From IMG/VR virus record IMGVR_UViG_3300010885_025649, positions 148,498 through 212,497 of that record: a DNA stretch of 64,000 nucleotides; one strand, given 5' to 3'. The position numbers and the translations under genes were made by a program. The notes below the pieces were generated by a model that saw only the letters and a program-made list of their open reading frames with translations, was not told the origin of the DNA and did no database searches. Shown piece after piece: positions 9,456-54,805 of this stretch (position 1 is the first letter of the stretch; every line of letters begins with the position of its first letter).

Positions 9456-9461
9456 CATTAA

Positions 9462-10144: not shown

Positions 10145-10234
10145 ATCTTAGATATACTCTCTCCTATGCGGTTATTGCAGTAGTACGAGAGCTTCTGTTC
10201 CCAGGCTTATTCAGCCCGATGTATAGAGAAACTC

Positions 10235-10429
10235 TTAGCGGATGTAGATCCGTTTCTGAGTTTTCTCTACTGTGCAAGTTGCGCTATTAAACGCAGGATC
10301 GCACAGGGTATACAACAGTTGATATTCTTGGCGAACATCTTTGTACTGTGTATTACCTACATACACACTATATCCTTGGTACATGACCAAGTGGATAAGT
10401 GTGCTTAGAGAGATTAGTAATGGGTGCAT
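10235..10429 (-). CDS. hypothetical protein
   Basis: 64 aa, GGAG upstream, long structured leader. Confidence 0.55.
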   Translation of the reverse strand: MHPLLISLSTLIHLVMYQGYSVYVGNTQYKDVRQEYQLLYTLCDPAFNSATCTVEKTQKRIYIR

Positions 10430-10545
10430 TACTAACTCCGTAAGTCCCTCCGAGTAACGTCCTTAGGGGTCTACGTATCCGCTATTAATTCTCTTCGACA
10501 AGAGAACCACAGGTTAAACCCGGAGTTGACGGATAAAGTGCAACT

Positions 10546-10594
10546 CAAATAAAGAGTCGGAACTTCCTAGGGAAACTAGGATAAAGCTCCGACT
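10546..10594 (-). promoter_or_regulatory. junction J11
   Basis: AGTCGGAACTT-CCTAGGGAAACTAGG-ATA-AAGCTCCGACT. Confidence 0.75.
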
Positions 10595-10601
10595 ATATCA
10601 C

Positions 10602-11057
10602 TTAAACTGTGTAGTCACGACACCCCTGCCCAAAGGCCAGGGGATTTACGCCACAAGGGAGGAGAGCCTCCCCTGTGGCGTATACACAGCCCTTGCAAAG
10701 GTTTTCCGACTCCGGATATGCCGGTGGCGGACTATATAATTGGTATGCCGGGTGAAGGGCAATATTGCCCTCAAATACCGGTGGCAGATCTTGCCACCGG
10801 TCCTCCCACACCCATACCGTTATGTGACATGCCCAGAAGGGCAGTAACGGTATGGCACCGTCTGCATCCTGCACAGGCAGGATGACCATATAATTATTAA
10901 ATTGCGGATCCTGATAGTGGATCCGAACGCGGGGAGTTTCCCTCGCCTCAATCTTAGCCGTGCTAAGATTAAGGTTGGCTTGGGCTTTCGCCCGTTTTGC
11001 TGCATACGCAGCGTATCCGGGAAACGTAGCCAATGTAGCCAGGTTGGTACGTGCCAT
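10602..11057 (-). CDS. protein with C-terminal CxxC..CGVNP..C domain (DUF6464-like)
   Basis: CKGCVYATGEALLPCGVNPLAFGQGCRDYTV; start MARTN after GGAGAG. Confidence 0.7.
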   Translation of the reverse strand: MARTNLATLATFPGYAAYAAKRAKAQANLNLSTAKIEARETPRVRIHYQDPQFNNYMVILPVQDADGAIPLLPFWACHITVWVWEDRWQDLPPVFEGNIALHPAYQLYSPPPAYPESENLCKGCVYATGEALLPCGVNPLAFGQGCRDYTV

Positions 11058-11095
11058 GTGTCTCTCCAATAAGCCGCCTTTAAAAGAGGGCAGCT

Positions 11096-11171
11096 CAAAT
11101 AAAGAGTCGATAATACTTATCCTAGAAAAGAAGTCGGAACTTCCTAGGGAAACTAGGATAAAGCTCCGACT
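11096..11171 (-). promoter_or_regulatory. junction J12: hairpin plus tandem motifs
   Basis: hairpin identical to J11, spacer identical to J7 and J13. Confidence 0.75.
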
Positions 11172-11174
11172 TAG

Positions 11175-11813
11175 TTATGCTTTACGAGCAGCACGAAGGC
11201 GCGCCACTAAATCTTTAGGCACTTGACGACAAGGACCAGACAAGATACCTATCAAGGTATCATACTCTCGCTTTGAAAACGCGTCCATCCCAGCGATTAG
11301 CCAGGACTCTCCATCGGGACGTTCAACCCTCCAACCGGTGTTAACCGGCACTGGGGACCAAGTCCACCAGCTACCATGAGGTAAGGTAGACTTATGCAGC
11401 AAGGCATAAATCTTGTTACCCCGCTCTAAGTAAAGCGTGTTTCCACTAATTTCTAGCCTCAAACTAAACCTGACCAAGATCTTGATCACCGTGGCAAGGT
11501 GCCACTTATATACGTAAAGCTTAACATTGTAGCGGTTAATCTCCGGTGGCTCAACGGGAGCCAACATTACTGCGGCTACCCAAAGGAGGCAGCGCACCGC
11601 TGCTGGAGGGCAACTTACACCCTCCGCATAGTACGAGCCAGGGGCTAGACACCCCGGAATTTGTGATACCTGTAGGAGAGCGGTATAGCCCTCCTTGGGA
11701 ATGAGTAGAATAACTCGACCCATGGTTGTGGGCACGACGGCCCTCACATTAAAGTCAAACATCCCGGTCAGGATGGACGAAACTTTTTCTTCGGTCACGT
11801 TTACTTTAAACAT
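11175..11813 (-). CDS. hypothetical protein, paralogue of 9462..10034
   Basis: 212 aa, ends LRAARKA. Confidence 0.65.
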   Translation of the reverse strand: MFKVNVTEEKVSSILTGMFDFNVRAVVPTTMGRVILLIPKEGYTALLQVSQIPGCLAPGSYYAEGVSCPPAAVRCLLWVAAVMLAPVEPPEINRYNVKLYVYKWHLATVIKILVRFSLRLEISGNTLYLERGNKIYALLHKSTLPHGSWWTWSPVPVNTGWRVERPDGESWLIAGMDAFSKREYDTLIGILSGPCRQVPKDLVARLRAARKA

Positions 11814-11854
11814 CTTGATGTCTCCAATAAGCCGCCTTTAAAAGAGGGCGAACT

Positions 11855-11920
11855 CAAATAAAGAGTCGATAATACTTATCCTAGAAAAACTGTCGAATGT
11901 AGTGCTAGTACATCCGACAG
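11855..11920 (-). promoter_or_regulatory. junction J13: hairpin plus tandem motifs
   Basis: CTGTCGAATGTA..TACATCCGACAG. Confidence 0.7.
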
Positions 11921-11976
11921 CTTGGTGGTCAGTTATTTAGATTGTCTATCCTCGCAGACCTACGAGGGTTAATTGG

Positions 11977-12420
11977 TTACGGGCTATCCGCGCATAAATC
12001 TTCAATGATGCTTAATACATCATCAAAGTCCTGTGCAGGAAATACAACCCCTAACGAAGTGATGACAGCCCAATTAAAGCCATCATGTTCGTAGAAGCCG
12101 TACACACCCAACTTAAATGTGCCGATAACGACATCTAAGCTAAGTGGTTCCACCACAGGAGGTGCCACAGAATAACCCATAAGTACCTGTCCCCAGATGC
12201 CCAGGTCCGTGGCATAACCCTGAATAGCAGGATTAAGCCCATCGCCATAGGCCCAGTGCAGATGCAGGTCTTCAATAACCTCATGAACGGTAATACGAGT
12301 ACCATCCTTGAAGGCCTTGAATCCCCACACCTCACCTTGTGGGTTATAGATTTGCTCAACAGTAATGTTAAGCTCCTCTACAACCCCAACTGGTGGCAGG
12401 AAGAAATGGAGTTTATCCAT
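11977..12420 (-). CDS. hypothetical protein
   Basis: start MDKLH after AAAGGAG. Confidence 0.65.
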   Translation of the reverse strand: MDKLHFFLPPVGVVEELNITVEQIYNPQGEVWGFKAFKDGTRITVHEVIEDLHLHWAYGDGLNPAIQGYATDLGIWGQVLMGYSVAPPVVEPLSLDVVIGTFKLGVYGFYEHDGFNWAVITSLGVVFPAQDFDDVLSIIEDLCADSP

Positions 12421-12484
12421 GTTCTCCTTTCTCCCGCGTGCAGATAACCAGCTAGTTATCCTACGTCTTATGGAGTTCAATCAA

Positions 12485-12558
12485 CAAATAAAGAGTCGAT
12501 AATAATTAATCTAGAAAAGAAGTCGCTAACCCCTAGAGACTAGGATAAGTTAGCGACT
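12485..12558 (-). promoter_or_regulatory. junction J14: hairpin plus tandem motifs
   Basis: AGTCGCTAACC-CCTAGAGACTAGG-ATA-AGTTAGCGACT. Confidence 0.75.
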
Positions 12559-12564
12559 TAACTT

Positions 12565-12639
12565 TTAGAAGCTAAAGTACGCGATGATCATCGCTATAAT
12601 AGCGATGAACAAAGAACCTTCAGCAATCTTCTTCAACAC
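12565..12639 (-). CDS. 24-aa single-TM peptide
   Basis: TAAGGAGGTGA then MLKKIAEGSLFIAIIAMIIAYFSF*, occupying its own cassette. Confidence 0.6.
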   Translation of the reverse strand: MLKKIAEGSLFIAIIAMIIAYFSF

Positions 12640-12664
12640 AGAAATCACCTCCTTAGGTGTGTAC

Positions 12665-12696
12665 CTAAAGAAGAGGTCGGGGTATTCCCCCGACCT
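12665..12696 (-). promoter_or_regulatory. junction J15
   Basis: AGGTCGGGG-TATTC-CCCCGACCT. Confidence 0.7.
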
Positions 12697-12700
12697 ACTA

Positions 12701-13249
12701 TTAATCTTTACTAAACGTTAAGACACCTCCAGTATCAAGGTAGATACGAAGGATTTCCCAATCGCTTTTATACGATAGGTGTGGAAGGAGTTTTTGAAGA
12801 TCTCCTTTCATACCCATACGTATAAGCAAATCTGGGGTTTGGAGCCACGAACTCCAGTTGAGTTGGTTTGTGCAGTGACTAAACCAATCATTATCTAAAT
12901 TGCCCGTACGAGCAAGTTGACTGATTTGGGAATCAGTCAAGGTGTAAAACTTCTTATCCCGCGCTTTAAGCGGGACAATGAGTTTCCCGGGTAGAGCATT
13001 AGGCCCCACCTGTGCAGCAACTCTCTGCTGTACCCGGATCTCCCCTAAAGGAGTGCCCACGATTCCCCACCAAAGATGGAACAAATCATGAACAGAAGGT
13101 ACTGCTGCCCCCTGTTCAATGTACCACTGACAAAGGGAACCCCCCCCTTGTAGTCTAAATAACTTTATGGGACATTGTTGCTCCGCGTCATCAACGCGGA
13201 TAAACAATAGCGAGCCCATCCGGTGACCACTCTTCTTAGATAATCCCAT
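12701..13249 (-). CDS. hypothetical protein
   Basis: 182 aa ORF, GGAGAGG upstream. Confidence 0.65.
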   Translation of the reverse strand: MGLSKKSGHRMGSLLFIRVDDAEQQCPIKLFRLQGGGSLCQWYIEQGAAVPSVHDLFHLWWGIVGTPLGEIRVQQRVAAQVGPNALPGKLIVPLKARDKKFYTLTDSQISQLARTGNLDNDWFSHCTNQLNWSSWLQTPDLLIRMGMKGDLQKLLPHLSYKSDWEILRIYLDTGGVLTFSKD

Positions 13250-13294
13250 GATCCTCTCCCTGGAGTACCTCTACGAAATTGTAGAGCAGTAGTC

Positions 13295-13333
13295 CAAGAA
13301 AAAGAGTCGGAGGTTGCTAGCCTCCAACTCTTT
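13295..13333 (-). promoter_or_regulatory. junction J16
   Basis: AAAGAGTCGGAGG..CCTCCAACTCTTT. Confidence 0.7.
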
Positions 13334-13339
13334 ATTTAC

Positions 13340-13744
13340 TTATTGCGGTGGGAATTCAAAGAACTCCACGATGGTAGTCAACGGGAGGTGCACCCATTTA
13401 GAGTAATGCACCTCCGTTAACATAACATTTGACGCATAGGGCAGGGTGCCCTCAGTCATGGAGAGTGTAATATGAGGGTGCGTGTTATCGCACACCTCCT
13501 GGATCTCCTCAGGAAGGAGAACTGACAGGGCTTGCACCCTATCATCGTGGTGTGACAGCATAGCTGTCACAATAAGCTGCTGACCAAGCAGGTGTTGATA
13601 GCCGACGCTATCAACCCCGAACTTGAGCGTGCAATGGAAGTGTTTAGCTTCCACTGGAAACTCGAAGTTCACAGCAGCTTTGACTGCTGCGATGGCCTCA
13701 GCAGTCAAAGAAAGCCAAAGAATTCCCTTTGCCATGTCATTCAC
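13340..13744 (-). CDS. 2H phosphoesterase
   Basis: two HxT motifs: FHCTLKF and PHITLS, followed by G..P.ASN.ML; start may be ATG at 13735. Confidence 0.75.
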   Translation of the reverse strand: MNDMAKGILWLSLTAEAIAAVKAAVNFEFPVEAKHFHCTLKFGVDSVGYQHLLGQQLIVTAMLSHHDDRVQALSVLLPEEIQEVCDNTHPHITLSMTEGTLPYASNVMLTEVHYSKWVHLPLTTIVEFFEFPPQ

Positions 13745-13766
13745 CTGGGGTGTGAAAGATTTGCCC

Positions 13767-13814
13767 CAGAAAAGAAGTCGGTAATCCCTAGAGAAACTAG
13801 GATAGATTACCGAC
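13767..13814 (-). promoter_or_regulatory. junction J17
   Basis: GTCGGTAATC-CCTAGAGAAACTAGG-ATA-GATTACCGAC. Confidence 0.75.
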
Positions 13815-13820
13815 AGCTAG

Positions 13821-14168
13821 CTACAGGTAGACCCTGCAGTTAGTCAGGAGTATAGGATACTCCTCTCTTAACCAATCTCGATCCTCCTCTAAAAGAGGGA
13901 CAGGATCCTCATTATCAATACGATAATGAGTGGCACGATTGCACACCTCATCACCGTTCATTATATCTTCAACAATGTAACCATCTAAGGTTACAAACTC
14001 ACTGTTAAACATGGAGCAAAGCTCCTGTGTAATATAGCTCTTACTCCTAAAAGGAGTAATGGGGCCTAAGTCCCCATTGTTAATTTGATCTCTCTCGACT
14101 GTATCCCGGGTAACTTTACCCACAGCCAGTAAACAAAACTCATAGGCCTCAGCAGTAAACTTGATCAT
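13821..14168 (-). CDS. hypothetical protein
   Basis: 115 aa, AAGGAGG RBS. Confidence 0.7.
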   Translation of the reverse strand: MIKFTAEAYEFCLLAVGKVTRDTVERDQINNGDLGPITPFRSKSYITQELCSMFNSEFVTLDGYIVEDIMNGDEVCNRATHYRIDNEDPVPLLEEDRDWLREEYPILLTNCRVYL

Positions 14169-14223
14169 GGTGAACCTCCTTGACAGAGAGGGGAACCACC
14201 CCGAGATCTTTAATAGAGGATCT

Positions 14224-14273
14224 CAGAAAAAGAGTCGAAGACTATAAGAGGAGGCTCTTACAATCTTCGACTC
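14224..14273 (-). promoter_or_regulatory. junction J18
   Basis: GAGTCGAAGA..TAAGAG-GAGG-CTCTTA..TCTTCGACTC. Confidence 0.7.
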
Positions 14274-14276
14274 CAG

Positions 14277-14615
14277 TTAGGCATCATAAACAAGGGTATT
14301 ACCCCCAGCTTTCTGAAAGCCTAAACTTAAGAAGGCCAAGCTCCGATGCTCAGCCAAGCCATCCCCCTCATAAGGAATGGCCATTACTTCAACCCCAGCC
14401 AAGGGGCCAGCGGTCCATTGGCTGAAGGTACGACAAAGCCATCGTACAATCCGGACTTTCGTCCTAACTTCAGCACTAACAATAGTATAACTATTATTAA
14501 TGCTAAAGCTAATAGACCCCGAGCTTGCAGTCCCACGGAACTCAAGCTCAACGGCAACCCCATCAATTAGGGTTACCGCTTTGATAATGTCTAGTTCCAT
14601 ATTAGAAACTATCAC
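14277..14615 (-). CDS. hypothetical protein, paralogue of 14914..15306
   Basis: AIPYEGDGLAEHRSLAFLSLGF; start uncertain, no SD seen. Confidence 0.6.
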   Translation of the reverse strand: MIVSNMELDIIKAVTLIDGVAVELEFRGTASSGSISFSINNSYTIVSAEVRTKVRIVRWLCRTFSQWTAGPLAGVEVMAIPYEGDGLAEHRSLAFLSLGFQKAGGNTLVYDA

Positions 14616-14617
14616 AA

Positions 14618-14647
14618 CAGAAAAAGAGTCGAGGCAGTTGCCCCGAC
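14618..14647 (-). promoter_or_regulatory. junction J19
   Basis: CAGAAAAAGA-GTCGAGGC-AGTT-GCCCCGAC. Confidence 0.7.
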
Positions 14648-14691
14648 ATCTTAGTTAGAATTTCTTACCCGCGCTAACTACGCGGACACCC

Positions 14692-14847
14692 CTAAAGTCC
14701 AGCCCCAAGCTGGTCTAGGGTGATGAACCCTAGCCTCCAAGCTTGAAGCCAACAGTTGGAAGGGGTGCACTCCTCAACTGTTGTGAACATCTTCACTACC
14801 AACTGGCGCTCAGCATCAGTCAGTAACAAAGCTAACTGTGGGCACAT
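14692..14847 (-). CDS. 51-aa small protein
   Basis: TAAGGAGGTGA then MCPQLALLLTDAERQ...GAGL*. Confidence 0.6.
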   Translation of the reverse strand: MCPQLALLLTDAERQLVVKMFTTVEECTPSNCWLQAWRLGFITLDQLGAGL

Positions 14848-14876
14848 AAAGAATCACCTCCTTAAGGTTATGCTCA

Positions 14877-14915
14877 CAGAAAAGAAGTCGAAGGGAAGGC
14901 CCTCCAACTTCTTTT
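14877..14915 (-). promoter_or_regulatory. junction J20
   Basis: AAGAAGTCGAAGGG-AAGG-CCCTCCAACTTCTT. Confidence 0.7.
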
Positions 14916-15306
14916 AGGTGATAAGAAAATAACTATCACCATACTCGGCAAAGCCGAGTGAATCAAGAAATTTGCAGCGGACACTGTGATGGCCATCACC
15001 ATCACAGGGAAACGCGCAAACAATGGTGTTTGCGGGGAGACCCGCGATGTGTGCTTTTACAGCACGGTACGCGGTACGGACCGCGCTTGTTGGGACGACG
15101 CTGTGGTTAGCAGCATTGTAACCAACGGAGCCATTAACATCTGCATCGAGGACGATGCAGCTGACGTAATCATCACCGAAGAAGTCTTCGGTGACGAAGA
15201 AGTTGACGCTAAGCGCGCCAACGGTGATATCAGCATTGAAGCTGACATCAACAGGAGTATTAGATACTCCTGCTTTGAGATTAGTAAGTTGGCGAATGGT
15301 ATTCAT
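14914..15306 (-). CDS. hypothetical protein, paralogue of 14277..14615
   Basis: AFPCDGDGHHSVRCKFLDSLGF; AAGGAGG RBS. Confidence 0.65.
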   Translation of the reverse strand: MNTIRQLTNLKAGVSNTPVDVSFNADITVGALSVNFFVTEDFFGDDYVSCIVLDADVNGSVGYNAANHSVVPTSAVRTAYRAVKAHIAGLPANTIVCAFPCDGDGHHSVRCKFLDSLGFAEYGDSYFLIT

Positions 15307-15341
15307 TCCCCCCCTCCTTCTGTTACCCAGATTAGGTAACT

Positions 15342-15411
15342 CAAATAAAAAGTCGGAGGATACAGAAAGAAAGTCGTTAACTCCTAGGGAAACTAGGATA
15401 AGTTAACGACT
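15342..15411 (-). promoter_or_regulatory. junction J21: hairpin plus tandem motifs
   Basis: hairpin identical to J3. Confidence 0.75.
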
Positions 15412-15417
15412 AGTCAC

Positions 15418-15540
15418 TTAAGGGCAGCGATAAACGATGCAGATGGCTGCATCGAGAGTAGCCAAATACAGGGCTAATCCAACGTTGACAAGAATCGCGG
15501 CGAGGGCCGCGATTAAAATATCCAATGCGTATTTGCGCAT
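15418..15540 (-). CDS. 40-aa membrane peptide
   Basis: AAGGAG then MRKYALDILIAALAAILVNVGLALYLATLDAAICIVYRCP*. Confidence 0.6.
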   Translation of the reverse strand: MRKYALDILIAALAAILVNVGLALYLATLDAAICIVYRCP

Positions 15541-15571
15541 GGTGTCTCCTTGTTACCCAGATTAGGTAACT

Positions 15572-15627
15572 CAAATAAAAAGTCGGTATATACAGAAAAG
15601 AAGTCGGTAACCAAGGGGTTACCGACT
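15572..15627 (-). promoter_or_regulatory. junction J22: hairpin plus tandem motifs
   Basis: AGTCGGTAACC-AAGG-GGTTACCGACT. Confidence 0.75.
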
Positions 15628-15633
15628 ATGAGA

Positions 15634-15840
15634 TTAGAATCCAAGGGCGCTAAGGCCATCTTGGATTGTCTTGAGTCTAGTTGGGGTGGTACGATACCCC
15701 CCTGCTAGACAGACAAGATGAAAATATAAATCTGGGTTTTTTGTACAAAACGGATTTGCCGAGTATACGGTATCCACCGAAGGGGTGAACACGGAAACGG
15801 AAACGGAAACAATCAAAACAAAACGGATTAACTTTGACAT
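15634..15840 (-). CDS. small protein with possible signal peptide
   Basis: MSKLIRFVLIVSVSVSVFTP; TAAGGAG RBS; first gene of the array. Confidence 0.6.
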   Translation of the reverse strand: MSKLIRFVLIVSVSVSVFTPSVDTVYSANPFCTKNPDLYFHLVCLAGGYRTTPTRLKTIQDGLSALGF

Positions 15841-15863
15841 TTGAACTCCTTAATAGTGGAGGA

Positions 15864-15877
15864 CAAATAAAGAGTCG
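15864..15877 (-). promoter_or_regulatory. junction J23: first motif of the array, no hairpin
   Basis: CGACTCTTTATTTG with no upstream co-oriented gene. Confidence 0.7.
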
Positions 15878-16063
15878 AGGCACAGAGGCTCCCAGTGTCA
15901 AGGGTATGAGCTAAAAAATCTAGACGAAAACACATATATGCCGGGGGGGTATAGCAAGTACATATATGGCCTATTCAGAAAATTTCTAATTTTTTGGTGG
16001 GAAGTCGGAATTTCCCGATTCGAATCTGATATGGTTAGAAAGTATACACCGGAGAGTTGCCTT

Positions 16064-16807
16064 ATGCCATTTTTAAATACCCTAATCGGATTCCTATCCG
16101 AGAATACTAACGGTGGGGTTATTGTAGATGTAACTCAGAAAGATTCACCAATAATCTACGTGAACAAAGCTTTTGAAGAACTTACAGGATATAGCGCTAC
16201 AGAAGTAATAGGAAAGAACTGCAGATTTTTACAAGGCGGCGACAAGAATCAAGTCGGCATTCTACAATTAGGATTAGCGATTAACCAAGGAATAGGCTGT
16301 AAAGTATTGCTCCGCAATTATAGAAAAGACGGCTTAATGTTTTGGAATGATTTAGCAATCACGCCAATCAAAGATGACGAAGGAAAGGTAAAATATTATA
16401 TAGGAATTCAATCCGATATAAGTGCAAGATTAGAAGGAACAAGAAGTTCTCAGGATACTTTAATCAAGTTCACTAAACTGGACATGGAGTTATTACAGAT
16501 CCAAAGAGACATAAGTAATCTATTAAAGATTGTACAGATTGGAAATGGTAACCCGAGTTTAATTCGTAGAGTGGACAAAGTGGAAACAAGATTAGATGAC
16601 GTGCAAAAAGATATCTCTGAGTTAAAAGCTTTATATATAAGTGAAAGTGAATCTATCAGAGATACTTTAGGAACAATAGTAGAGAACACGCAGACTAATA
16701 AGGGCACAACCAGTGCAGCAATAATTACAGCAATAGCCACAACAATCATAGGATTACTAACTATTTTTGGTCCTCAATTAGTAACCTTATTACATTTAGT
16801 TAAGTAA
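16064..16807 (+). CDS. LOV (PAS) flavin photoreceptor domain + coiled coil + C-terminal TM helix
   Basis: PIIYVNKAFEELTGY..GKNCRFLQG (16211-16237)..NYRKDG..FWN..YYIGIQSD; GGAG precedes ATG at 16064 (ORF track start 15938). Confidence 0.85.
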   Translation: MPFLNTLIGFLSENTNGGVIVDVTQKDSPIIYVNKAFEELTGYSATEVIGKNCRFLQGGDKNQVGILQLGLAINQGIGCKVLLRNYRKDGLMFWNDLAITPIKDDEGKVKYYIGIQSDISARLEGTRSSQDTLIKFTKLDMELLQIQRDISNLLKIVQIGNGNPSLIRRVDKVETRLDDVQKDISELKALYISESESIRDTLGTIVENTQTNKGTTSAAIITAIATTIIGLLTIFGPQLVTLLHLVK

Positions 16808-16831
16808 CCTTAATACCCGATATTACTTTCC

Positions 16832-19800
16832 TCAAGTAGTCATTACAGACATATCATTCCCGGCCACATCTTGGAAGTGGTATTCATATTCCTGATTATT
16901 AATAGAACTAAGATAAGAAGTCTGATTTAATTCAGAATCATCATATTCATCAATAGAATCAGTAATAGAGACCTCCGCGATATTAAGAACATCAGACTCT
17001 CCAGCAGAGTTAATAAGCTCAAGCCGATATCTTTCAGCTTGGGCTTGTTCATATTCATTCTCAATAGCTTGAGCAGTCAAGGAAGTAACAGGGGATTCTT
17101 CTCTAGTAGCTGTCCGGACAGCCATAGCCGCAGATAACCCCGCGGCAAGCGCACCAAACGCGGCAGTAATAAGTCCGGATCCCATATTAGCAAGACCACG
17201 AGAAGCAAGTTCTCCAACATTAGTACCTTCTTTCCCTATAAATTTAGCAATAGGTGTTGTAATAACATCAGATAGGATAGTACTACCAACAATATTTCCT
17301 GCAAGACCGAGGGCATAGCCCCCTAAGATTTCATGTCGGGTATCACTATCAGACATATCCCTCATAGATTTAACTGCAGAGGTAATATCCGAGGCCATCA
17401 TAAAAGCGGATCTCATAGGAGCGAAAGTATTAGAAGACATAAGGCCATGACCAACAGATCTACCTAATTCAGCAGGATCAGTATTAGACTCTCTACCTAA
17501 AGCGCCACCAACAATAGAAGCACCGATAGTAGTAACTGCCAGCATACCATATCCAAGGAATCCCATAGGAGTATTATTAGACATAGCATTTTTAAAGTTT
17601 CTAATAAGGCCACTAGGAGGATTAATATGTGCGCGCAGTTCATTAGATTGCGCTAATCTAGTAACCATTTCATTAGCTTCATAAGGATTCATTTGTTTAA
17701 TATTATTATGTAAAGCATTAGAGAGATCCACAAGATTTTGATTATGTTCATTAGAATCTGGTGCTGAAGTAGACTCATAAGCAGCTTGTGCAATAAACAT
17801 CATAGTTTCCTTAGCAGTTTGTCCAGAGATACCTAATCTAGAAGCATCACTAATAGCACGATCAATAATAAGTTTTCTACCTACAATTCGTTTAGCCGTT
17901 TCATAATCAATTACTTTGCTTTGTGGTCCAGCACTAGTAGAATATTCATGAGTATAACTTGCAGTACTGGGGTCAGTACCAATCATACCCGTAGCTCTAA
18001 TATAAGAAACACCATTAACAATTTTACCAGAACCATTAACATAAATTTCCCCTGGGAAAGCTCTAGGACCATGGCTAGAATATTCAAGAATTTTATCAAC
18101 AGCATCACTAAAAGTCTTAGTCTTCATAGTCTCATCAATAGAGGCTCTAAAGCCAGACATAATTTCTTTAATATTTACATTATGTAATTTACCTCTACCA
18201 AGGATATCAGTAATAGTAGTACCAGCACCTTCACGGCTAGCAAAGTTTACTGATTCCGTAATAAGGGCTTGACCAATATGTGCAGCGGCCAAAGCCAAAT
18301 CACCAATATCAGCTTTACTTTCAGTAGTTAAAGCTTTCTGAACCCCATACATCTTTTGAATATTAAGTAATCCTTTATGCATAAGTTCATTAACTTTATT
18401 ACGGGCATCAGGAACAGAAAGGGGATCAAAGTCAATAGAACCCAATCCAGCTTCACCAAAAGGAGCAATAGTATTACTAGTATTAATACGACTAGCCATA
18501 AGTTCACGCTCATTTAAAGTAGAAGTAACAAACTTAAATAGATCATGATACTGGTGTGCTTGTAGAACTCTATTCATAGTATCTTGAAGATCCTTAGTAT
18601 AAGTAACAGTACCAGTAGTATCAGTAGCAAAAGCTCTAAGAGCAGCAATATCAGAATTATTCATTGCCGATCTACCCAGACTATCTTCTGCAAGCGTAAC
18701 CAACCGGGTAATCTTCTCACTACTCCCTCCAGTAACTAATTCTTCATCTAAGGTTTGGAATAAGTTAGCCGCAATTCTACGAATAGTTTGCAGTTTAGTA
18801 TGAGGAACTTCTTTAGCAAAGTCATGAGCAATTTCATCACTACTAAGAGATCCCACATGTGCTGCAAGAGCACCATAGCTTAAATTTGTAAGGATTTTAT
18901 TAGAGATAGATTCTGTAAGTGGAGTACCGGCATTACCTTGGACAGCAGATATATAATCTGCAACAGGATTAAGAAGCCCAGTAGCTTGAACAGCTTGATC
19001 AAGAGCTGCAGGTTGCAACTTAGTTTTAGTAGGCTTGTCTTCATAAGCATTCTCATACAATTGATTTAATGCAGTATACATTTCGCTAGGAGATACTCCG
19101 GTAGCAGCATTAGGTTTAATACCTTCTCTTCCCAGCATTTGCATTTGATAAGCAATACGAGATACAGACTCAATCGTTCTAGCTTTAGCTTTACCCATAC
19201 TATCCGCTTGTAAAAACTCATGACTAAATATATGAGAAGTAGTATCATAAAGCATACCCATATACTTAGTAGCCACTTGAGCAGTTTGTTGAGTAGCAGC
19301 CGCGGCTATATTTTGAGGCATAATAACAGGGAACATTAGTTTAAGGTAACTATTAACAGTTCCTTCATTAGCAGAATACGCAGCCAAATGTTGGCTTAAG
19401 GTTGGATTACCTTGTATAGTATTAAGTTTATCTTCAACAGAAGCAGATTTAAAAGCTGCGGCGCCTGCCGCTCCAAGTTCTGTTGAGACAACAGTTTCAA
19501 ACTCAGCACTATGAAAGTGATCAATAATTTTAGTAGTAGATTCATACTGTGCTCTACCAAACTTATTAAGAAGAATAGAGTCTTCAATTGTTTGGGCATT
19601 AAGTCCAGAAAGAACTCTTGATTGACGTTTGAAGGTAGCTAAGATATTAGTATCAGAGGTAACATTTGCTGTTACTTGTTCATGAAGACTAACAATACGT
19701 TTATCCTCCATAATTCTTTCAGCAGTTTCTTCAGCAGATGTTGGGCCAAGTACACCATAAAGTGCATCATAAGTACTATGAACCGCATCAACTCCTGAAG

Positions 19801-22800
19801 TACCATAAGGAATAACAGTAGTATTTACCGCTTGTCCAGCGCTACGTAATCTATTAGTAGAATCTGTTACAGCTTGACTAATATCTGTAGTAGTAGGTGT
19901 TCTACCCAGGCGTCTACCAATAATAGCATCACGTTCAGCCATTGCTTGTGCGCTACTAGTAAGAGCTTGAATGGTAGCCATATCCCCGTCATAATCCCCT
20001 TGCTGGTAGCCCATAGCAAACTTAGACACGAATATACTATCAGAATTATTCGCGAATCCTAGCTGCACTCCGCGTCTTCCAGCAGCACGATTATTAAGAG
20101 TTCTCAGAGTAATAACCTTCAAAGCGGCGGGGGCAACACCCTGAGGTGCTCCTGCTCTTAGGAACATACTAAAGAATCTATCACTATATGCATCCACCTT
20201 AAGCATACTAAAAGTGTCATTAATAACACCTAATAGATTACGATCATAGCCTTGTTTAGTAGTAGGATCTAAGATACCATAAGATTCCGCATGATGACGA
20301 AGACTATAGCCATTAAGTTTAATATCATCTAATATAGAACTGCCAGCAGTAGAACCAACCAAAGTACTCTTTAGAGTAGTTTCATCTAAAGTAAAGGGAT
20401 TTGTAACAAAAAACTTAGGGTTAGTATAAGTATGAGCTTTAGTTAAAATATCAAACCCACTATCTAAGATTTCTTGATCTGCTCCCCCAGAGTAATAAGA
20501 TTTATTAGATTTAGCTTTAGTAACATAATCATTCACCACACGTAATGCAGGATTAAGTCCCAGAGCAATTTCTCCCAACTTAACCTGATTAGATTCCATA
20601 GTAACACCAGAACCCCCGGCCGCTCTATGAATAGTGGTAGATAAGTATTGTTGATAAGTATCAGAATCAAGTAGGTTAGAAAGCGCTGTAATATAATTCC
20701 TCTTAGCCTCATTAAGAGATTTCAGGTAAGAATACTCTTCAATAGATAACCCGTAGTTAATAAGCTTTTTACCATTAGCATTACTAACATTCTGACTCAT
20801 ATATTGAATCTTAGACATATTAGTATCAGGATCTATTTCCTTTAAGGAAGTCGGCATTTGGTTAAAGACTTTAGTAATCTCTTGTTGACTTAGAACAAGT
20901 CTATTAATATATTGATCTGCATTATCTCTATTAGGATTTACATTAATAGATAATTGTTTAAGTTGTTCTGCTCCCAGTACAGGAATAAGTTCAAAGTCTA
21001 AGATAGTAGATTCAATATTTCTATGTACTCTAACTGCATTAGGAATAGCGGCCCCTAATTCAAATGTAGGAATCAGGACAGTACCCTTCTGCCTTGCGGC
21101 AAGTACTTCCTGTCTATATTTATACATATCAGTTTCATTAATTCCACCTGCTGTTCTATCTGCCGCAGAGGTATTAACTAAGGTTTGTATTTTAGTATTT
21201 AAATCTATTTTATTAGTACTAGATAATACATAACCAACAGCAGATTCTTTAGCTGATCTATACATAGAATCATACAAACTATGAATAGCCATAGCTTGAT
21301 TTCTTGTCTCTTCATTTACGACCAAGTGAGTAAGATCTAATCCACCATGCCATTGAGTATCAAAGGCAGGAGCAAATTCAGTTAAGCCTTGACTAAAAGC
21401 GCCGACAAGGAACATTCTCCCAATAGCTTGTTGAGTTAATTGTCTTAAGAGACCTATCTGTGATTGTTCACCGACAAGATCAGCAAAGGGAGTATTAGCA
21501 GTAAAGCCAAGGTGATCTGAATCATTAGCATAGTGTTCATATAAAGAAGCGTACTGACTAAACATATTAGCAGAAGTCTTGCGGCCAAATCTGGTATCAT
21601 CTGCTCTAAAGGTATCTTGAGATAAAGTAATCAGATTAAAGTTAGGAATAATCTGTTGTAATCTTTGTAGAGCTGTATTATCTTTTGGTTTAGCCCCGAG
21701 CATTTGTCCTAATACAGAAGAGACTAAACCATCTAGTTCCTCATTAGCTGGGATTCTACTAGCTCTAACTTGTGTTTTAACCTGAGTATATAAAGAAACA
21801 GCTTCAATCAAGTAATAAGTAAAGTCTAATTTATGAGCTTGTGCTTGTTTTGCAGGAAGGATAAATCCAAACTTCTGACTTTGAGGACTCATTACTTCTG
21901 TATAAGCCTCTTTAAACAACTGATTAATATATTGTGCAGGATCAGCATGTTGTATAAACTGATATAATTCATTATAGAAACCATGAGGAGACCCCGCAGT
22001 ATAATAACTTTGCATAGCTGCCTTGACTTCAGGAGGTGTTTTATTATAGAAATCAATTTGCTCCTTAGACATTTTATTAACTAAACTTTCAGTAAGCTTT
22101 TTAACATCCTCAATAACTTCTTGAGTAAGTGTCTGCAAATGTTTAGTAGAACTATGTGTTTGAAGATTTCTTAATTCCATAATCTTCATGAAATCATCTT
22201 CATTAGTAGCCATTAACGCGCCATATCTAAGTTTAAGGGCACCAGACATTTTAGGTTGTGTCCCATACTTAAACTGTTTAGGAGATACAAGTCTATTAAT
22301 AAGAGGGCTAGCTGTTGCCAAAGATCCCTTAAGTTTTGTTCTAAAGTCAGCACCATCATTAACAAAGAGTTTATCTTCATCAAAGACATCATTATTCATC
22401 AAGACATCTTGAACAGCATTACTAAGTCTAAGGAATCTTCTAGCCCCAATACCTCCATAAATACCATCTAAGGCATTTGCTTGCGTTTCGGCATAAGTTC
22501 TATTCATACCTGCGGTAGGACCTTTAGTATCAAGCAATCTAGCAGTAGGATTAGTATAAAGTTTAGCTTTAAAAGTGACAGCAGTATTACCAGATTGTTC
22601 TGGATCCACATTAATCATAACAAACTGCATTTTAGCGCCGGTTCTATTTTCAGCTAAGTTAGGAACTTCAACAGTAAAACCTGCCCCCATACCAACAGAT
22701 TTCTGTAGATTAGTAACAGCAACTTTAAATTCATCTTCAGTATAAAAGTTACCCGCAGTAACTAAATCTCTTAGTTTAGTAACTAAGTTATTATGTGTGT

Positions 22801-53516: not shown

Positions 53517-54167
53517 ATGTCATCATGTAGTCAACAGTTTAATAATTTAATTAACGCGGCTGTACAAGATGCAGCCAACTTTGTAGTACCAATAGTAGCA
53601 GATTACTTTCAGCCTTTAGCAGATAAATTGTCTAGTTTCTTTAATCAAAACAAAGGATTAGACTTTGCTAGTATTCAAAACAATATAAATGATTTTATTA
53701 ATACGAATATTACAGACACAATTAAGCAGTTAAGTAAAGACCTAACTGCAGCAAATACAAGTATTAATAAATATATTCAACAGCAAATAAAAGAGGCTTT
53801 AGATAATGTATATAGTACAGTAACAGATAGCATTACATCTTTATTTGGGAAAGCTTCTTTAGATTATTTAGCTAATAGTTTACCCGCATTACAAAGCACC
53901 TTAGGATGTTTACTTACTGATCAATTAGGGCCATTAAATGATTTACTAAATGCTAAAGATAAACTAGTAGATGATTTAACAACTGAATTAGCCAATGGAA
54001 CTAATCTATTAAATACAATTACTAGTTATACTCCTCAACCAATGATTAATACTGCGTTATCTAATTACATGGCTATTCCTGGAATTCAACAAGCAGAACA
54101 AGTAGTTAAAACAGCTTTAGATAATAGATTAAAAGGTAAAGCTATAGTAGCCACAGGTAACCCTTAA
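53517..54167 (+). CDS. helical hypothetical protein
   Basis: 216 aa. Confidence 0.55.
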   Translation: MSSCSQQFNNLINAAVQDAANFVVPIVADYFQPLADKLSSFFNQNKGLDFASIQNNINDFINTNITDTIKQLSKDLTAANTSINKYIQQQIKEALDNVYSTVTDSITSLFGKASLDYLANSLPALQSTLGCLLTDQLGPLNDLLNAKDKLVDDLTTELANGTNLLNTITSYTPQPMINTALSNYMAIPGIQQAEQVVKTALDNRLKGKAIVATGNP

Positions 54168-54805
54168 GCAAGTCCTAAGGCTTGTTTAGCATGTGCCCAG
54201 CAAACAATTCTATCAGTTTCTCCATTAGTACCACCATTAATAGCTCTACCTATTTGCTTAAAGGAATTAAGATCTTTCTTATCCGCCAATTCATTTAGTT
54301 CACGAGTATACCAGAACCAACCTGCGCTCATACAAGCAAATCTTGGTGTAGCTAATAAATCAGGACTCATTACTAAAGTTAGCTCTGAGGGAATTAGTTT
54401 GCGCTTAAATAATTCTCTAGATAGAAAAGTATAATTAGCTTTACCTGTAAGCTGAATTAATCCACGCCCCCTATATTTATAGCCATCAGTAGGAATTGTA
54501 TTCCCCATACGATTGGCATAAACTATATTAGCAATCTTATCTGGTTTACGGGCATTTACTAGCGCTGTAGCATAGTTAAAGTATTTAGGGAATGTCTTAA
54601 GTAATCCCTGCACGCCATAGTTAAGATTCTCTACAACTGCTGTAAGAGCAGCGCTTTCATGTGCAATCTGTGCTAAGAATGCAGCTTGTCTATAAGAAGT
54701 ATTTATCTCGAATACAATACAAGTCTCATTAATAAATGGTAAATACTTATCAGCATTAGCATCAGAACATCTAATAGCCTGCATTAATTGTTGTTTAGTT
54801 ATCAT
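54164..54805 (-). CDS. GH19-family endolysin
   Basis: AAFLAQIAHES, YRGRGLIQLTGKANY, INGGTNG..DR. Confidence 0.9.
   Translation of the reverse strand: MITKQQLMQAIRCSDANADKYLPFINETCIVFEINTSYRQAAFLAQIAHESAALTAVVENLNYGVQGLLKTFPKYFNYATALVNARKPDKIANIVYANRMGNTIPTDGYKYRGRGLIQLTGKANYTFLSRELFKRKLIPSELTLVMSPDLLATPRFACMSAGWFWYTRELNELADKKDLNSFKQIGRAINGGTNGETDRIVCWAHAKQALGLA

What the first reader, a model, noticed from the sequence alone, without database searches (positions are those of the whole stretch)
16064..16807. Phage-encoded LOV blue-light sensor fused to a coiled coil and membrane anchor
Seen: full LOV signature GKNCRFLQG with the adduct-forming Cys, both flavin-binding Asn (NYRKDG, FWN) and the signalling Gln (IGIQSD). 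It is followed by a heptad-rich segment (LIRRVDKVETRLDDVQKDISELK) and a terminal hydrophobic helix, with no kinase, GGDEF, STAS or HTH output. The composition is AT-rich like the late region, so it does not look like a recent host capture. Inference: the coiled-coil+TM tail resembles XhlA/holin-like phage membrane proteins, so light may gate oligomerisation and lysis timing, or another membrane process, in a phototrophic host.
Basis: partly seen in the sequence, partly recalled or inferred. Interest (0 to 1): 0.86.

Follow-up and report, generated by a model that had tools for sequence, protein, structure and literature searches.

The report
Cyanophage LOV light sensor fused to XhlA-like anchor
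A large virus of freshwater cyanobacteria encodes a blue-light sensor domain joined directly to a small membrane-anchored module distantly related to a phage lysis (holin-type) protein, so the virus itself may sense light to control a membrane step such as the timing of host lysis.

Summary
Window 16064-16807 (+) encodes a 247-aa protein. It has a canonical LOV domain: Pfam PAS_9 at 78 bits, PDB LOV hits at E 1e-34, and the adduct Cys53, Asn85, Asn95 and Gln116 all present. One continuous helix leads from the LOV core to a GNGNPS turn, a second heptad helix and a C-terminal transmembrane helix.

The C-terminal half belongs to a conserved, unnamed phage family (V-R-D-G-N-G-Q-P-S turn, tail-anchored). 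I found more than 130 stand-alone copies of 85-195 aa in viral and metagenome contigs. None of them is fused to a sensor.

A 50-sequence profile of this family matches genuine XhlA proteins (SPP1 gp24.1 and relatives) with 89.6% hhalign probability, well above the shuffled, reversed and DHp controls. It fails Pfam's XhlA threshold, and family members do not sit in lysis cassettes.

In a related Microcoleus cyanophage the same module ends an overlapping histidine kinase-REC-REC operon, so it behaves as a signalling output.

The host is very probably a cyanobacterium. The gene is identical in five assemblies. I found no paper describing a phage-encoded LOV protein.

Photochemistry, membrane insertion and a role in lysis timing are all untested.

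The parts
16051..16056 (+). Shine-Dalgarno GGAGAG, 7 nt before the ATG at 16064
   Evidence: Read directly from the sequence. It supports the 247-aa start used by the public gene calls.
16064..16807 (+). Whole gene: 247-aa LOV / coiled-coil / tail-anchor protein (P0001), stop codon included
   Evidence: ORF list. The exact protein is encoded on 5 public assemblies with 100% identical DNA over window 15000-17800.
16067..16102 (+). N-terminal A'alpha helix (aa 2-13)
   Evidence: AlphaFold model me7e2147119cb, helix 2-13, pLDDT about 89. The same element is present in short LOV structures matched by Foldseek.
16112..16417 (+). LOV core (aa 17-118)
   Evidence: Pfam PAS_9 at 78.4 bits. PDB LOV hits at E 1e-34. 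pLDDT 94-98. Foldseek TM-score 0.84-0.91 to short LOV proteins.
16220..16222 (+). Codon of Cys53, the flavin-adduct cysteine in GKNCRFLQG
   Evidence: This column is invariant in 56 LOV sequences. Aligned to the NCRFLQ motif of solved LOV domains.
16271..16273 (+). Codon of Gly70, where LOV domains normally carry the FMN-phosphate arginine (YtvA R79)
   Evidence: Column composition R49, K4, G2, H1. Pairwise alignments to PpSB1-type LOVs. Role of R79 taken from PMC3836802.
16421..16540 (+). J-alpha helix running without a break into helix 1 of the membrane module (aa 120-159)
   Evidence: AlphaFold helix 120-159. 3-4 hydrophobic spacing at L139-V157 read from the sequence. Foldseek aligns LOV plus this helix plus the hairpin to the LOV-kinase chimeras SB2F1 and YF1 over about 205 columns.
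16541..16558 (+). GNGNPS turn (aa 160-165), the window's version of the family's V-R-D-G-N-G-Q-P-S signature
   Evidence: G36, N37 and S41 are invariant, and V33, R34, D35, G38, Q39 and P40 are at least 90% conserved, in the 50-sequence family alignment A7. Helix break in both models.
16559..16696 (+). Helix 2 (aa 166-211), canonical heptads at L166-Y191; the start of the XhlA-like core
   Evidence: AlphaFold. hhalign of A7 against XhlA aligns from R168 through the transmembrane helix.
16712..16792 (+). C-terminal transmembrane helix (aa 217-243), followed only by HLVK
   Evidence: Kyte-Doolittle 19-residue maximum 2.16. AlphaFold helix 217-246. Aligned with the transmembrane helix of family members and of XhlA.
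54164..54805 (-). Phage endolysin (GH19-like). This is context only: a possible downstream partner if the lysis reading is right. No link has been shown.
   Evidence: PHROG 181 endolysin 7.3e-74. Pfam Glyco_hydro_19 at 24.2 bits, just under the cut-off of 25.5. No transmembrane or SAR segment and no recognisable holin nearby.

Best explanation
This is a phage-encoded blue-light receptor whose output is a membrane module instead of an enzyme or DNA-binding domain.

Shown:
- A canonical LOV domain.
- One uninterrupted helix from the LOV core into a helix-turn-helix.
- A C-terminal transmembrane anchor.
- Membership of the C-terminal half in a conserved, otherwise stand-alone phage family.
- Probable distant homology of that family to the XhlA holin-type proteins of Bacillus phages.
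- A second, independent coupling of the same module to signalling proteins in a related cyanophage.

Inferred mechanism: the LOV domain sits in the cytoplasm on the inner face of a host membrane, held there by the tail anchor. Blue light forms the Cys53-flavin adduct. As in dimeric LOV receptors with coiled-coil linkers (YF1, SB2F1), the change is passed as a rotation or re-packing of the J-alpha coiled coil. Here that coiled coil is helix 1 of the module, so light would alter how the helical hairpins and the attached transmembrane helices associate.

Most likely consequence (weakest step): light switches an XhlA-like membrane activity on or off. The holin-type step that releases the cytoplasmic endolysin, and so the time of lysis, would then follow the day-night cycle of the cyanobacterial host.

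My confidence by step:
- Photoactive LOV domain: about 0.8.
- Membrane-anchored with LOV in the cytoplasm: about 0.8.
- LOV regulates the module, which is more than an anchor: about 0.6.
- The regulated process is lysis: about 0.3.
For: - LOV identity and key residues.
- Architecture.
- Foldseek's best matches are LOV-kinase chimeras, aligned over LOV plus linker plus helical hairpin (about 205 columns).
- The C-terminal half finds a family of small tail-anchored proteins. Exhaustive phmmer. Profile search. IMG/VR gives 55 loci and metagenomes 121 loci.
- XhlA relation: PHROG 689 'holin' is the top PHROG for the window protein and for 6 of 20 members. hhalign of A7 against genuine XhlA (Pfam 36-53 bits) gives probability 89.6%, E 1.9e-6, score 40.8. 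Controls: reversed XhlA 19.3; 120 segment-preserving shuffles with mean 13.1 and maximum 26.6; DHp hairpins 15.4.
- XhlA-type proteins act with holin and endolysin in PBSX and SPP1 (PMC5589764; PMC8878798). In Bacillus phages they sit directly upstream of endolysin or holin genes.
- Module as a signalling output: in Microcoleus phage My-WqHQDG a family member (HMM E 4e-18) is the last gene of an overlapping operon PAS-HisKA-HATPase kinase / REC / REC / member.
- Cyanobacterial host; the bioRxiv preprint 10.1101/2023.04.12.536658 gives the CRISPR-based host link of the nearest relative.
- Cyanophage infection is known to follow light-dark cycles (10.1101/167650, listed).
- The endolysin has no signal or SAR segment, so it needs a membrane lesion to reach the wall.
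Against: - No experiment exists. Flavin binding, photocycle and membrane insertion are predictions.
- G70 replaces a conserved flavin-phosphate arginine. YtvA data indicate the phosphate contributes little to binding (PMC3836802).
- The gene is not in a lysis cassette. It lies alone between the early-type block and a 3188-aa ORF, 37 kb from the endolysin.
- None of 66 neighbours of stand-alone relatives is an endolysin, holin or spanin. They are QueC-like, GlmS/SIS-like, polynucleotide kinase, RNR, 2H phosphoesterase and CsrA genes.
- Pfam's own XhlA threshold is not reached. The hhalign match includes a transmembrane helix, which can inflate scores.
- The window's turn has diverged from the family signature (Q-I-G-N-G-N-P-S against R-D-G-N-G-Q-P-S).
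- The protein is a single genotype, identical in all five assemblies, so there is no comparative evidence that selection maintains the fusion.
- No partner holin was found in the 64 kb window. The other 148 kb of the contig was not available.
Confidence: 0.45

Rival explanations
1. A regulated membrane effector with a role other than lysis. The DGNGQPS family would carry out some early or middle host-takeover task at the membrane, such as tethering or sequestering a host factor, remodelling membranes or blocking superinfection. In this phage light tunes that task.
For: - Stand-alone members sit among nucleotide, RNA-repair and regulatory genes (QueC-like, GlmS/SIS-like, PNK, 2H-SAK, CsrA, RNR, sigma factor), not lysis genes.
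- The near-invariant V-R-D-G-N-G-Q-P-S turn looks like a binding site at the tip of a hairpin more than a mere turn.
- The module is wired to a kinase and two REC proteins next to primase and helicase genes in the Microcoleus phage.
- The LOV gene lies at the border of the early-type block.
Against: - The only family with a known function that the module resembles is XhlA.
- Large phages often scatter their lysis genes (established for T4; my own knowledge). Context is therefore weak evidence against a lysis role.
- No candidate partner or task can be named.
Confidence: 0.27
2. A membrane-tethered 'short LOV' that signals by binding a partner. The LOV domain with its J-alpha helix would be the working part. 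It would capture or release a host regulator in a light-dependent way, as short LOV proteins do with LitR- or PpsR-type regulators. The C-terminal half would only hold it at the membrane.
For: - The closest solved relatives are short LOV proteins (MrLOVe 9vf7, PpSB1/2-LOV, PF5-LOV; 38-44% identity, TM-score 0.84-0.91).
- Partner-binding short LOVs are documented (PMC9758184 and PMC10890935, listed).
Against: - The C-terminal half is a conserved family that exists on its own in more than 130 loci, so it has a function of its own.
- The helix from LOV into that module is continuous, which is the arrangement of sensor-effector fusions.
- In the Microcoleus phage the module is again the terminal element of a signalling operon.
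Confidence: 0.18
3. A photochemically dead PAS domain. The LOV-like domain would no longer bind flavin usefully and would serve only as a dimerisation or ligand-binding domain on the membrane module.
For: G70 replaces the arginine conserved in 49 of 56 LOV domains that contacts the FMN phosphate. There is only one genotype, so purifying selection on the photocycle residues cannot be shown.
Against: All other flavin-pocket and photocycle residues are intact, including Cys53, Arg54, Gln57, Asn85, Asn95 and Gln116. In YtvA riboflavin, which has no phosphate, binds at least as well as FMN (PMC3836802). One other LOV sequence in the alignment also has Gly at this column.
Confidence: 0.07
4. Not a phage gene: a host gene or an assembly chimera joined to phage DNA.
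For: GC content changes abruptly (48% to 35%) about 150 bp upstream of the gene.
Against: - The gene lies on the AT-rich side, with phage-like GC3.
- The junction and gene are 100% identical in five independent assemblies. One is a 155.5-kb contig in which the gene lies mid-contig.
- Structural phage genes follow.
- No full-length homologue exists in 5.8 billion proteins.
Confidence: 0.02

Closest known systems
Short bacterial LOV photoreceptors (PpSB1/PpSB2-LOV, PF5-LOV, MrLOVe, YtvA LOV)
   Same: Same sensor: A'alpha helix, LOV core and J-alpha helix. 38-44% identity, Foldseek TM-score 0.84-0.91. The GxNCRFLQ cysteine and the flavin-pocket Asn and Gln residues are present.
   Different: Those proteins end after J-alpha or carry a STAS domain. 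Here J-alpha continues into a membrane-anchored helical module. Gly70 replaces the conserved phosphate-binding arginine. The gene is encoded by a phage.
LOV-histidine kinases with a coiled-coil linker (YF1, PDB 4GCZ; SB2F1, PDB 8A3U)
   Same: Best whole-model structural matches. LOV, continuous J-alpha linker and a helical hairpin align over about 205 columns. They provide the best-understood way for a LOV signal to travel along a coiled coil.
   Different: The hairpin here is not a DHp domain: hhalign probability is 0.6-1.4%. There is no phospho-accepting His and no ATPase domain. The second helix leads into a transmembrane helix.
XhlA family (Pfam PF10779): PBSX XhlA, SPP1 gp24.1
   Same: Short cytoplasmic coiled coil followed by a single C-terminal transmembrane helix. 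The family profile matches genuine XhlA with 89.6% probability over helix 2, linker and transmembrane helix. PHROG 689 'holin' is the top PHROG hit. XhlA-type proteins are needed, together with a holin and an endolysin, for lysis (PMC5589764, PMC8878798).
   Different: It fails Pfam's gathering score (15.2 against 34.7). It has an extra N-terminal helix and the V-R-D-G-N-G-Q-P-S turn. It is not next to holin or endolysin genes, whereas every genuine XhlA examined is (against 101). It is found in large phages of Gram-negative hosts and cyanobacteria, not in Bacillus siphoviruses.
Unnamed DGNGQPS tail-anchored phage family (e.g. XYR93278.1 of Xanthomonas phage PhiXhv-15; WOL31353.1 of Microcoleus phage My-WqHQDG)
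   Same: The C-terminal half (aa 125-247) aligns end to end with family members: helix, GNG-x-PS turn, helix, transmembrane helix.
   Different: All other members found are stand-alone proteins of 85-195 aa. Only this one carries a sensor domain. Its turn has diverged (Q-I-G-N-G-N-P-S).
Phage T4 lysis inhibition (holin T with antiholins RI and RIII). A functional analogy recalled from established knowledge, not tested here.
   Same: A large phage adjusts the time of lysis in response to an external signal, through small proteins acting on the holin at the membrane.
   Different: The T4 signal is superinfection, not light. There is no sequence relation, and no sensor domain of the PAS/LOV kind.
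RGS-LOV / BcLOV4 light-switched membrane binding (PMC6099885, listed)
   Same: A LOV domain whose output is exerted at a membrane and not through an enzyme.
   Different: Those are fungal, soluble proteins that bind anionic lipids reversibly by electrostatics. This protein is predicted to be permanently anchored by a transmembrane helix.

Membership tests
LOV photoreceptor domain (flavin-binding PAS subclass) | PAS fold recognised above curated threshold | tested here: met
   Pfam PAS_9 at 78.4 bits against a cut-off of 27. AlphaFold pLDDT 94-98 over aa 17-118. Foldseek TM-score 0.84-0.91 to solved LOV domains.
LOV photoreceptor domain (flavin-binding PAS subclass) | GxNCRFLQ motif with the adduct-forming cysteine | tested here: met
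   G50-K-N-C53-R-F-L-Q57. C53 and F55 are invariant, and R54, L56 and Q57 at least 90% conserved, in 56 LOV sequences.
LOV photoreceptor domain (flavin-binding PAS subclass) | Flavin-pocket Asn, Asn and Gln on the beta sheet (YtvA N94, N104, Q123) | tested here: met
   N85 and N95 are invariant. Q116 is present in 54 of 56 sequences and in the query.
LOV photoreceptor domain (flavin-binding PAS subclass) | Both arginines that contact the FMN phosphate (YtvA R63 and R79) | tested here: not met
   R54 is present, but the second position is G70 (column R49, K4, G2, H1). PMC3836802 reports that the phosphate adds little binding energy, so this may alter kinetics or flavin preference and need not abolish binding.
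LOV photoreceptor domain (flavin-binding PAS subclass) | Flavin binding and a reversible blue-light photocycle | not testable with these tools
   Needs purified protein and spectroscopy.
XhlA (Pfam PF10779) | Score above Pfam's gathering threshold | tested here: not met
   15.2 bits, E 0.025, against a cut-off of 34.7, although profile positions 5-66 of 67 are covered. Genuine members score 36-53 bits.
XhlA (Pfam PF10779) | Profile-profile similarity to genuine members beyond what composition and architecture give | tested here: inconclusive
   - A7 against A4: probability 89.6%, E 1.9e-6, score 40.8 over 62 columns.
- Reversed control 19.3. Shuffles give mean 13.1 and maximum 26.6. DHp control 15.4.
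- With the shallower alignment A3 the probability was 65%.
- The result is strongly suggestive but below the usual 95% level, and it includes a transmembrane helix.
XhlA (Pfam PF10779) | Small protein with a cytoplasmic coiled coil and a single C-terminal transmembrane helix | tested here: met
   Module helices 120-159 and 164-211, transmembrane helix 217-243. XhlA set A4 has the same layout.
XhlA (Pfam PF10779) | Gene placed in a lysis cassette next to a holin or endolysin | tested here: not met
   Genuine XhlA genes sit directly upstream of endolysin or holin genes. The window gene is 37 kb from the endolysin. No lysis gene is among 66 neighbours of relatives.
XhlA (Pfam PF10779) | Required for holin-dependent lysis | not testable with these tools
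   Needs co-expression or deletion experiments.
Unnamed DGNGQPS tail-anchored phage family | End-to-end similarity of the module to stand-alone members | tested here: met
   Single-sequence phmmer of aa 125-247 finds members at E 6e-6 to 9e-4. The Microcoleus phage member finds the window by tblastn at E 2.8e-4. Alignments A2, A3 and A7.
Unnamed DGNGQPS tail-anchored phage family | V-R-D-G-N-G-Q-P-S turn between the two helices | tested here: inconclusive
   The window has V-Q-I-G-N-G-N-P-S. The three invariant positions (G, N, S), plus V, the second G and P, are kept. R, D and Q are replaced.
Unnamed DGNGQPS tail-anchored phage family | Single transmembrane helix at or near the C-terminus | tested here: met
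Histidine-kinase DHp (HisKA) hairpin | Profile similarity to the DHp of LOV-kinases, and a phospho-accepting His | tested here: not met
   BLAST alignments to LOV-kinases run on into the hairpin. However, hhalign of the family against 15 DHp regions gives 0.6-1.4% probability, and there is no His at the H-box position.

The most novel reading that the evidence does not exclude
A tailed phage carries its own photoreceptor, wired straight into a holin-type membrane protein. The virus, and not only its host, would read daylight and set the hour of lysis. In that reading the DGNGQPS/XhlA-like family is a general, switchable lysis-timing device of large aquatic phages. This phage drives it with light. 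A related Microcoleus phage drives it with a two-component system.
Probability: 0.3. Interest if true: 0.9.

Novelty: new variant of a known kind. Interest (0 to 1): 0.78.

Why it matters
Cyanophage infections follow the day-night cycle. This is usually explained through the host's photosynthesis and energy state. A photoreceptor encoded by the phage itself would be a direct sensing route, and it makes the question testable with one small gene.

The find also gives LOV domains an output not seen before: a tail-anchored, XhlA-like membrane module. It gives a first functional handle, 'it is something worth regulating', on a widespread phage protein family that has no annotation.

If light really gates a membrane lesion, the 247-aa protein would also be a compact natural template for light-controlled permeabilisation or lysis of laboratory bacteria.

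Tried and rejected
1. DHp origin of the hairpin. BLAST alignments with LOV-kinases extend through the turn, and the H-box 'H-D/E-x-x-x-P-L' superficially resembles 'D-G-N-G-Q-P-S-L'. Profile-profile comparison rejects it (0.6-1.4%).
2. Lysis-cassette context. I looked at the neighbours of stand-alone members in 8 look-ups and in 17 viral clusters. No endolysin, holin or spanin was found. One 3.6-kb contig (L099) has a weak two-TM 84-aa ORF and a lipoprotein-like ORF downstream. It is a single case.
3. Other sensor fusions or sensor neighbours. No LOV/PAS, kinase or REC ORF lies within 5-6 kb of the member in 135 viral and metagenome loci. No other LOV-like ORF in IMG/VR carries the module.
4. 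A second, stand-alone copy in the window: none.
5. Shared synteny with the 2H-SAK gene that follows many members. The window's 2H-like ORF (13340-13744) does not match that profile.
6. Word-based protein search with the C-terminal half alone found nothing. Foldseek of the module alone against the PDB found nothing.
7. LOV hits in the GenBank phage collection are short, unannotated 'Listeria phage' contigs of 3-9 kb at 38% identity. I judge them likely host DNA and did not follow them.
8. Taxon of the nearest LOV domains: cluster look-up returned no organism names.
9. Giant ORF as an RNA polymerase (DYDGD motif): no PDB or phage match.
10. Sigma-70 promoter scan upstream of the gene: nothing above background.
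Full report
**The observation.** The window holds an ORF on the + strand from 15938 to 16807. The ATG at 16064 is preceded by GGAGAG at a 7-nt spacing. It is also the start chosen by the gene calls of three public assemblies. Pfam places a PAS_9 domain at 78.4 bits (cut-off 27) and finds no other domain. phmmer against the PDB returns 157 chains, led by LOV domains at E 3e-34.

**LOV residues.** I aligned the protein with 55 LOV proteins (A1). Every invariant or nearly invariant LOV column is kept: N34, G42, C53, R54, F55, L56, Q57, N85, Y86, K88, G90, F93, W94, N95, G114, Q116 and D118.

Position 70 is Gly, where 49 of 56 LOV domains have Arg. This is R79 of YtvA, one of two arginines on the FMN phosphate. 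The YtvA study reports that riboflavin, which lacks the phosphate, binds at least as well as FMN (PMC3836802). I therefore read G70 as a possible modifier of cofactor choice or recovery kinetics. I do not read it as a sign of a dead domain.

**Anatomy.** AlphaFold, run with the LOV alignment, gave mean pLDDT 84. The elements are:
- an A'alpha helix, aa 2-13;
- the LOV core, aa 17-118, pLDDT 94-98;
- one unbroken helix, aa 120-159;
- a break at G160-N-G-N-P-S165;
- a second helix, aa 164-211;
- a last helix, aa 217-246.

The sequence shows 3-4 hydrophobic spacing at L139-V157 and at L166-Y191. The last helix is a transmembrane segment, with a Kyte-Doolittle maximum of 2.16. Only HLVK follows it. 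There is no signal peptide, and a flavin cofactor must be acquired in the cytoplasm. The expected topology is therefore a tail anchor, with the LOV domain and the helices inside the cell.

Foldseek against the PDB ranks the chimeric LOV-histidine kinases SB2F1 and YF1 first. About 205 columns align, covering LOV, the J-alpha linker and a helical hairpin. Short LOV proteins follow at TM-score 0.84-0.91.

**The C-terminal half.** An exhaustive phmmer search of aa 125-247 against 1.84 billion representative proteins found only six real relatives. All are 81-150 aa, and all have the layout helix, [R/D]GNGQPSL, helix, transmembrane helix. A profile search added more. DNA-level scans showed the family is in fact common. 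IMG/VR holds 55 loci in 17 clusters at 70% identity, many on viral contigs of 150-208 kb. Metagenomes gave 121 confirmed loci from marine and freshwater samples.

In a 50-sequence alignment the turn V-R-D-G-N-G-Q-P-S is invariant or at least 90% conserved. Cultured carriers are the 227-kb Xanthomonas and Erwinia phages PhiXhv-12/15/16 and Ep026/Ep032 (HMM E 4.5e-15) and Microcoleus phage My-WqHQDG.

Every member found is a stand-alone protein of roughly 85-195 aa. The longer ORFs in my list come from upstream alternative start codons. The window holds no second copy. Among 5.8 billion proteins the LOV fusion is a singleton with no full-length homologue. None of the 26 other LOV-like ORFs on IMG/VR contigs carries the module.

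**Is the module XhlA-like?**
- Pfam's XhlA model matches at only 15.2 bits (cut-off 34.7), though over nearly its whole length.
- Across the family, Pfam mostly returns generic coiled-coil families.
- PHROG 689, annotated 'holin', is the top PHROG for the window protein (2.8e-5) and for 6 of 20 members. Two 'hemolysin' PHROGs follow.

To test this properly I took genuine XhlA proteins from Bacillus subtilis-group and B. cereus phages: SPP1 gp24.1 and four others. They score 36-53 bits on Pfam XhlA. Profile-profile comparison with the 20-sequence family alignment gave 65% probability. With the 50-sequence alignment it gave 89.6%, E 1.9e-6 and score 40.8 over 62 columns. The match spans helix 2, the linker and the transmembrane helix.

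The controls scored far lower (searches give the shallower-alignment controls):

| Control | Score |
|---|---|
| Reversed XhlA alignment | 19.3 |
| 120 column shuffles that keep the soluble and membrane segments apart | mean 13.1, maximum 26.6 |
| DHp hairpins of 15 LOV-kinases | 15.4 |

I conclude that the module is probably a distant XhlA relative with an added N-terminal helix and the conserved turn. It is not a member of the Pfam family as that family is defined.

**What XhlA does.** XhlA is a membrane protein needed, together with the holin XhlB and the endolysin XlyA, for PBSX lysis (PMC5589764). SPP1 and PBSX XhlA-like proteins are reported to function as holins (PMC8878798). In all five Bacillus phages I looked at, the gene sits directly upstream of an endolysin or holin gene.

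**Context argues neither way strongly.** The LOV gene stands alone on the + strand. Upstream lies a 48% GC block of small minus-strand genes. Downstream, converging on it, is a 3188-aa ORF, and the structural module follows. The phage's endolysin (PHROG 181, 7e-74) is 37 kb away inside the baseplate region. It has no signal or SAR segment and no recognisable holin beside it.

The neighbours of stand-alone members are QueC-like, GlmS/SIS-like, polynucleotide kinase, RNR, sigma factor, 2H phosphoesterase and CsrA genes. None is a lysis gene. This counts against a classical lysis-cassette role. However, large phages such as T4 scatter their lysis genes (my own knowledge), and this phage's endolysin is itself isolated.

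**An independent link to signalling.** In Microcoleus phage My-WqHQDG a clear family member (179 aa, 'ILYEGNGQPSITARMATIETGL', HMM E 4e-18) is the last of four genes whose ends overlap by 4-8 nt. The order is:
1. a PAS-HisKA-HATPase kinase of 545 aa;
2. a REC-only protein of 138 aa;
3. a REC protein of 171 aa;
4. the family member.

DNA primase and PIF1 helicase genes flank the operon. That phage is among the closest capsid relatives of the window phage. CRISPR spacers tie it to Microcoleus (bioRxiv 10.1101/2023.04.12.536658). In two related cyanophages, then, the same module is coupled to a sensory input, once by gene fusion and once by operon. This is the classic signature of a regulated output. 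It is the main reason I take the LOV domain to control the module and the module to be more than an anchor.

**Host and authenticity.** The window encodes a Mu-like portal, an HK97-type capsid protein, a tail sheath, baseplate J and gp25. The capsid protein's only matches among 50,697 phage records are the Microcystis Ma-LMM01 group and the Microcoleus phage, at 26-27% identity. A TnpB-like transposase inserted among the tail genes is 55-66% identical to copies in Pantanalinema, Leptolyngbyaceae, Nostoc, Stenomitos, Okeania and other cyanobacteria. These make up nearly all of the 80 best genome hits.

The LOV gene has GC 34.9% and GC3 29%, like the structural genes. Its best LOV relatives are only 45-56% identical. 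It is not a recent capture. The DNA from 15000 to 17800 is 100% identical in five assemblies. They include a 212.5-kb and a 155.5-kb contig. This rules out a chimera but leaves no variation from which to measure selection.

**Mechanism proposed.**
- Shown: the sensor, the continuous helix, the conserved module, the anchor, the distant XhlA relation and the signalling link.
- Inferred: LOV dimers pass adduct formation along the J-alpha coiled coil, as in YF1-type receptors. Here that coiled coil is helix 1 of the module, so light re-packs the hairpins and the attached transmembrane helices.
- Least certain: the affected activity is the XhlA-type contribution to the membrane lesion that lets the endolysin out, so that lysis is timed by light.

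The main rivals are a non-lysis membrane task for the module and a tethered short LOV that works by partner binding.

**Novelty.** Five full-text searches found no paper describing a LOV photoreceptor encoded by a phage. BFVD holds only generic viral PAS proteins at 26% identity or less. IMG/VR does hold 26 other LOV-like ORFs. Five are on giant-virus MAGs. Most of the others are multi-domain proteins on GC-rich contigs whose viral nature I did not check. LOV on viral contigs is therefore not unique. A LOV domain in a clear tailed phage, fused to a holin-type membrane module, is new as far as I can see. I rate it a new variant of a known kind: a LOV receptor with a new class of output.

Noticed in passing
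window 1-15900 (boundary about 15900-16000): A 48% GC block of small minus-strand ORFs with no Pfam, PHROG or phage-database matches abuts the 35% GC remainder of the phage. The junction is identical in five assemblies. The 14-mer CGACTCTTTATTTG occurs 15 times, only on the minus strand and only within 6343-15877 (0.46 expected). Each copy lies about 40 nt upstream of a gene start. Hairpin-plus-T-run repeats follow the genes. It looks like an early region of single-gene units with a phage-specific promoter. The LOV gene has no such motif.
   Followed up: partly
window 16832-26398 (-): A 3188-aa ORF converges on the LOV gene, with 24 bp between the two stop codons. It has no match in the phage collection or the PDB. 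It contains a single D-x-D-x-D motif (GDYDGDMA, aa 2135), reminiscent of RNA polymerase catalytic loops, and a hydrophobic segment near aa 3075. It may be a virion-packaged giant protein. This is untested.
   Followed up: partly
L095:2372-5462 (Microcoleus phage My-WqHQDG, OR578706.1 88856-91946): A phage-borne two-component operon with overlapping genes: a membrane PAS-HisKA-HATPase kinase, two REC proteins and a DGNGQPS-family membrane protein. The paper describing this phage does not mention it.
   Followed up: yes
window 45083-46309 (+): An IS605-type TnpB-like transposase (PHROG 506, 1e-107; GC 50%) is inserted between tail genes. Its closest relatives (55-66% identity) are almost all in filamentous cyanobacteria. 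It is useful as a host marker.
   Followed up: yes
window 54164-54805 (-), with 54910-55935 and 56181-56495 upstream on the same strand: An endolysin (PHROG 181, 7e-74; GH19-like, just under Pfam's cut-off) is embedded on the opposite strand inside the baseplate module. It has no SAR or signal segment and no holin or spanin nearby. The two ORFs transcribed ahead of it have no matches.
   Followed up: partly
window 15418-15540 (-) and 15634-15840 (-): Two tiny ORFs lie immediately upstream of, and divergent from, the LOV gene. Each has the early promoter-like motif. One encodes a very hydrophobic 40-aa peptide. The other encodes a 68-aa protein with an N-terminal hydrophobic segment. They are possible small membrane proteins next to the LOV gene. 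One public gene call lists both.
   Followed up: no
window 13340-13744 (-): A 134-aa ORF (GTG start) with two H-x-T motifs (HCTL, HITL) and weak Pfam hits to 2H phosphoesterases (tRNA ligase CPD, Acb1). Many stand-alone DGNGQPS-family genes are followed by a different 2H clade (2H-SAK). The two do not match by profile.
   Followed up: partly
L149-L154 (IMG/VR), e.g. L150:5944-6366: A 140-aa variant carries the LLDGNGQPSLMQR motif at its N-terminus, followed by a glycine-rich, fibre-like sequence with no transmembrane helix. It lies beside baseplate wedge and tail-fibre genes. The conserved turn may therefore be a docking motif used in more than one setting.
   Followed up: no
L237-L262 (IMG/VR): There are 26 other LOV-like ORFs on contigs classed as viral. 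Five giant-virus MAGs carry proteins of 281-796 aa (four of them 591-796 aa), and four of the five have the NCRFL motif. Very large 412-500 kb contigs also carry some. Most of the rest are multi-domain proteins on GC-rich 10-57 kb contigs that could be prophage edges. I did not check their viral origin.
   Followed up: no
window 42934-43605, 43697-44089, 44111-44983 (+): Three consecutive ORFs downstream of the sheath gene all match PHROG 34837 (unknown function), apparently a small tandem paralogue set.
   Followed up: no
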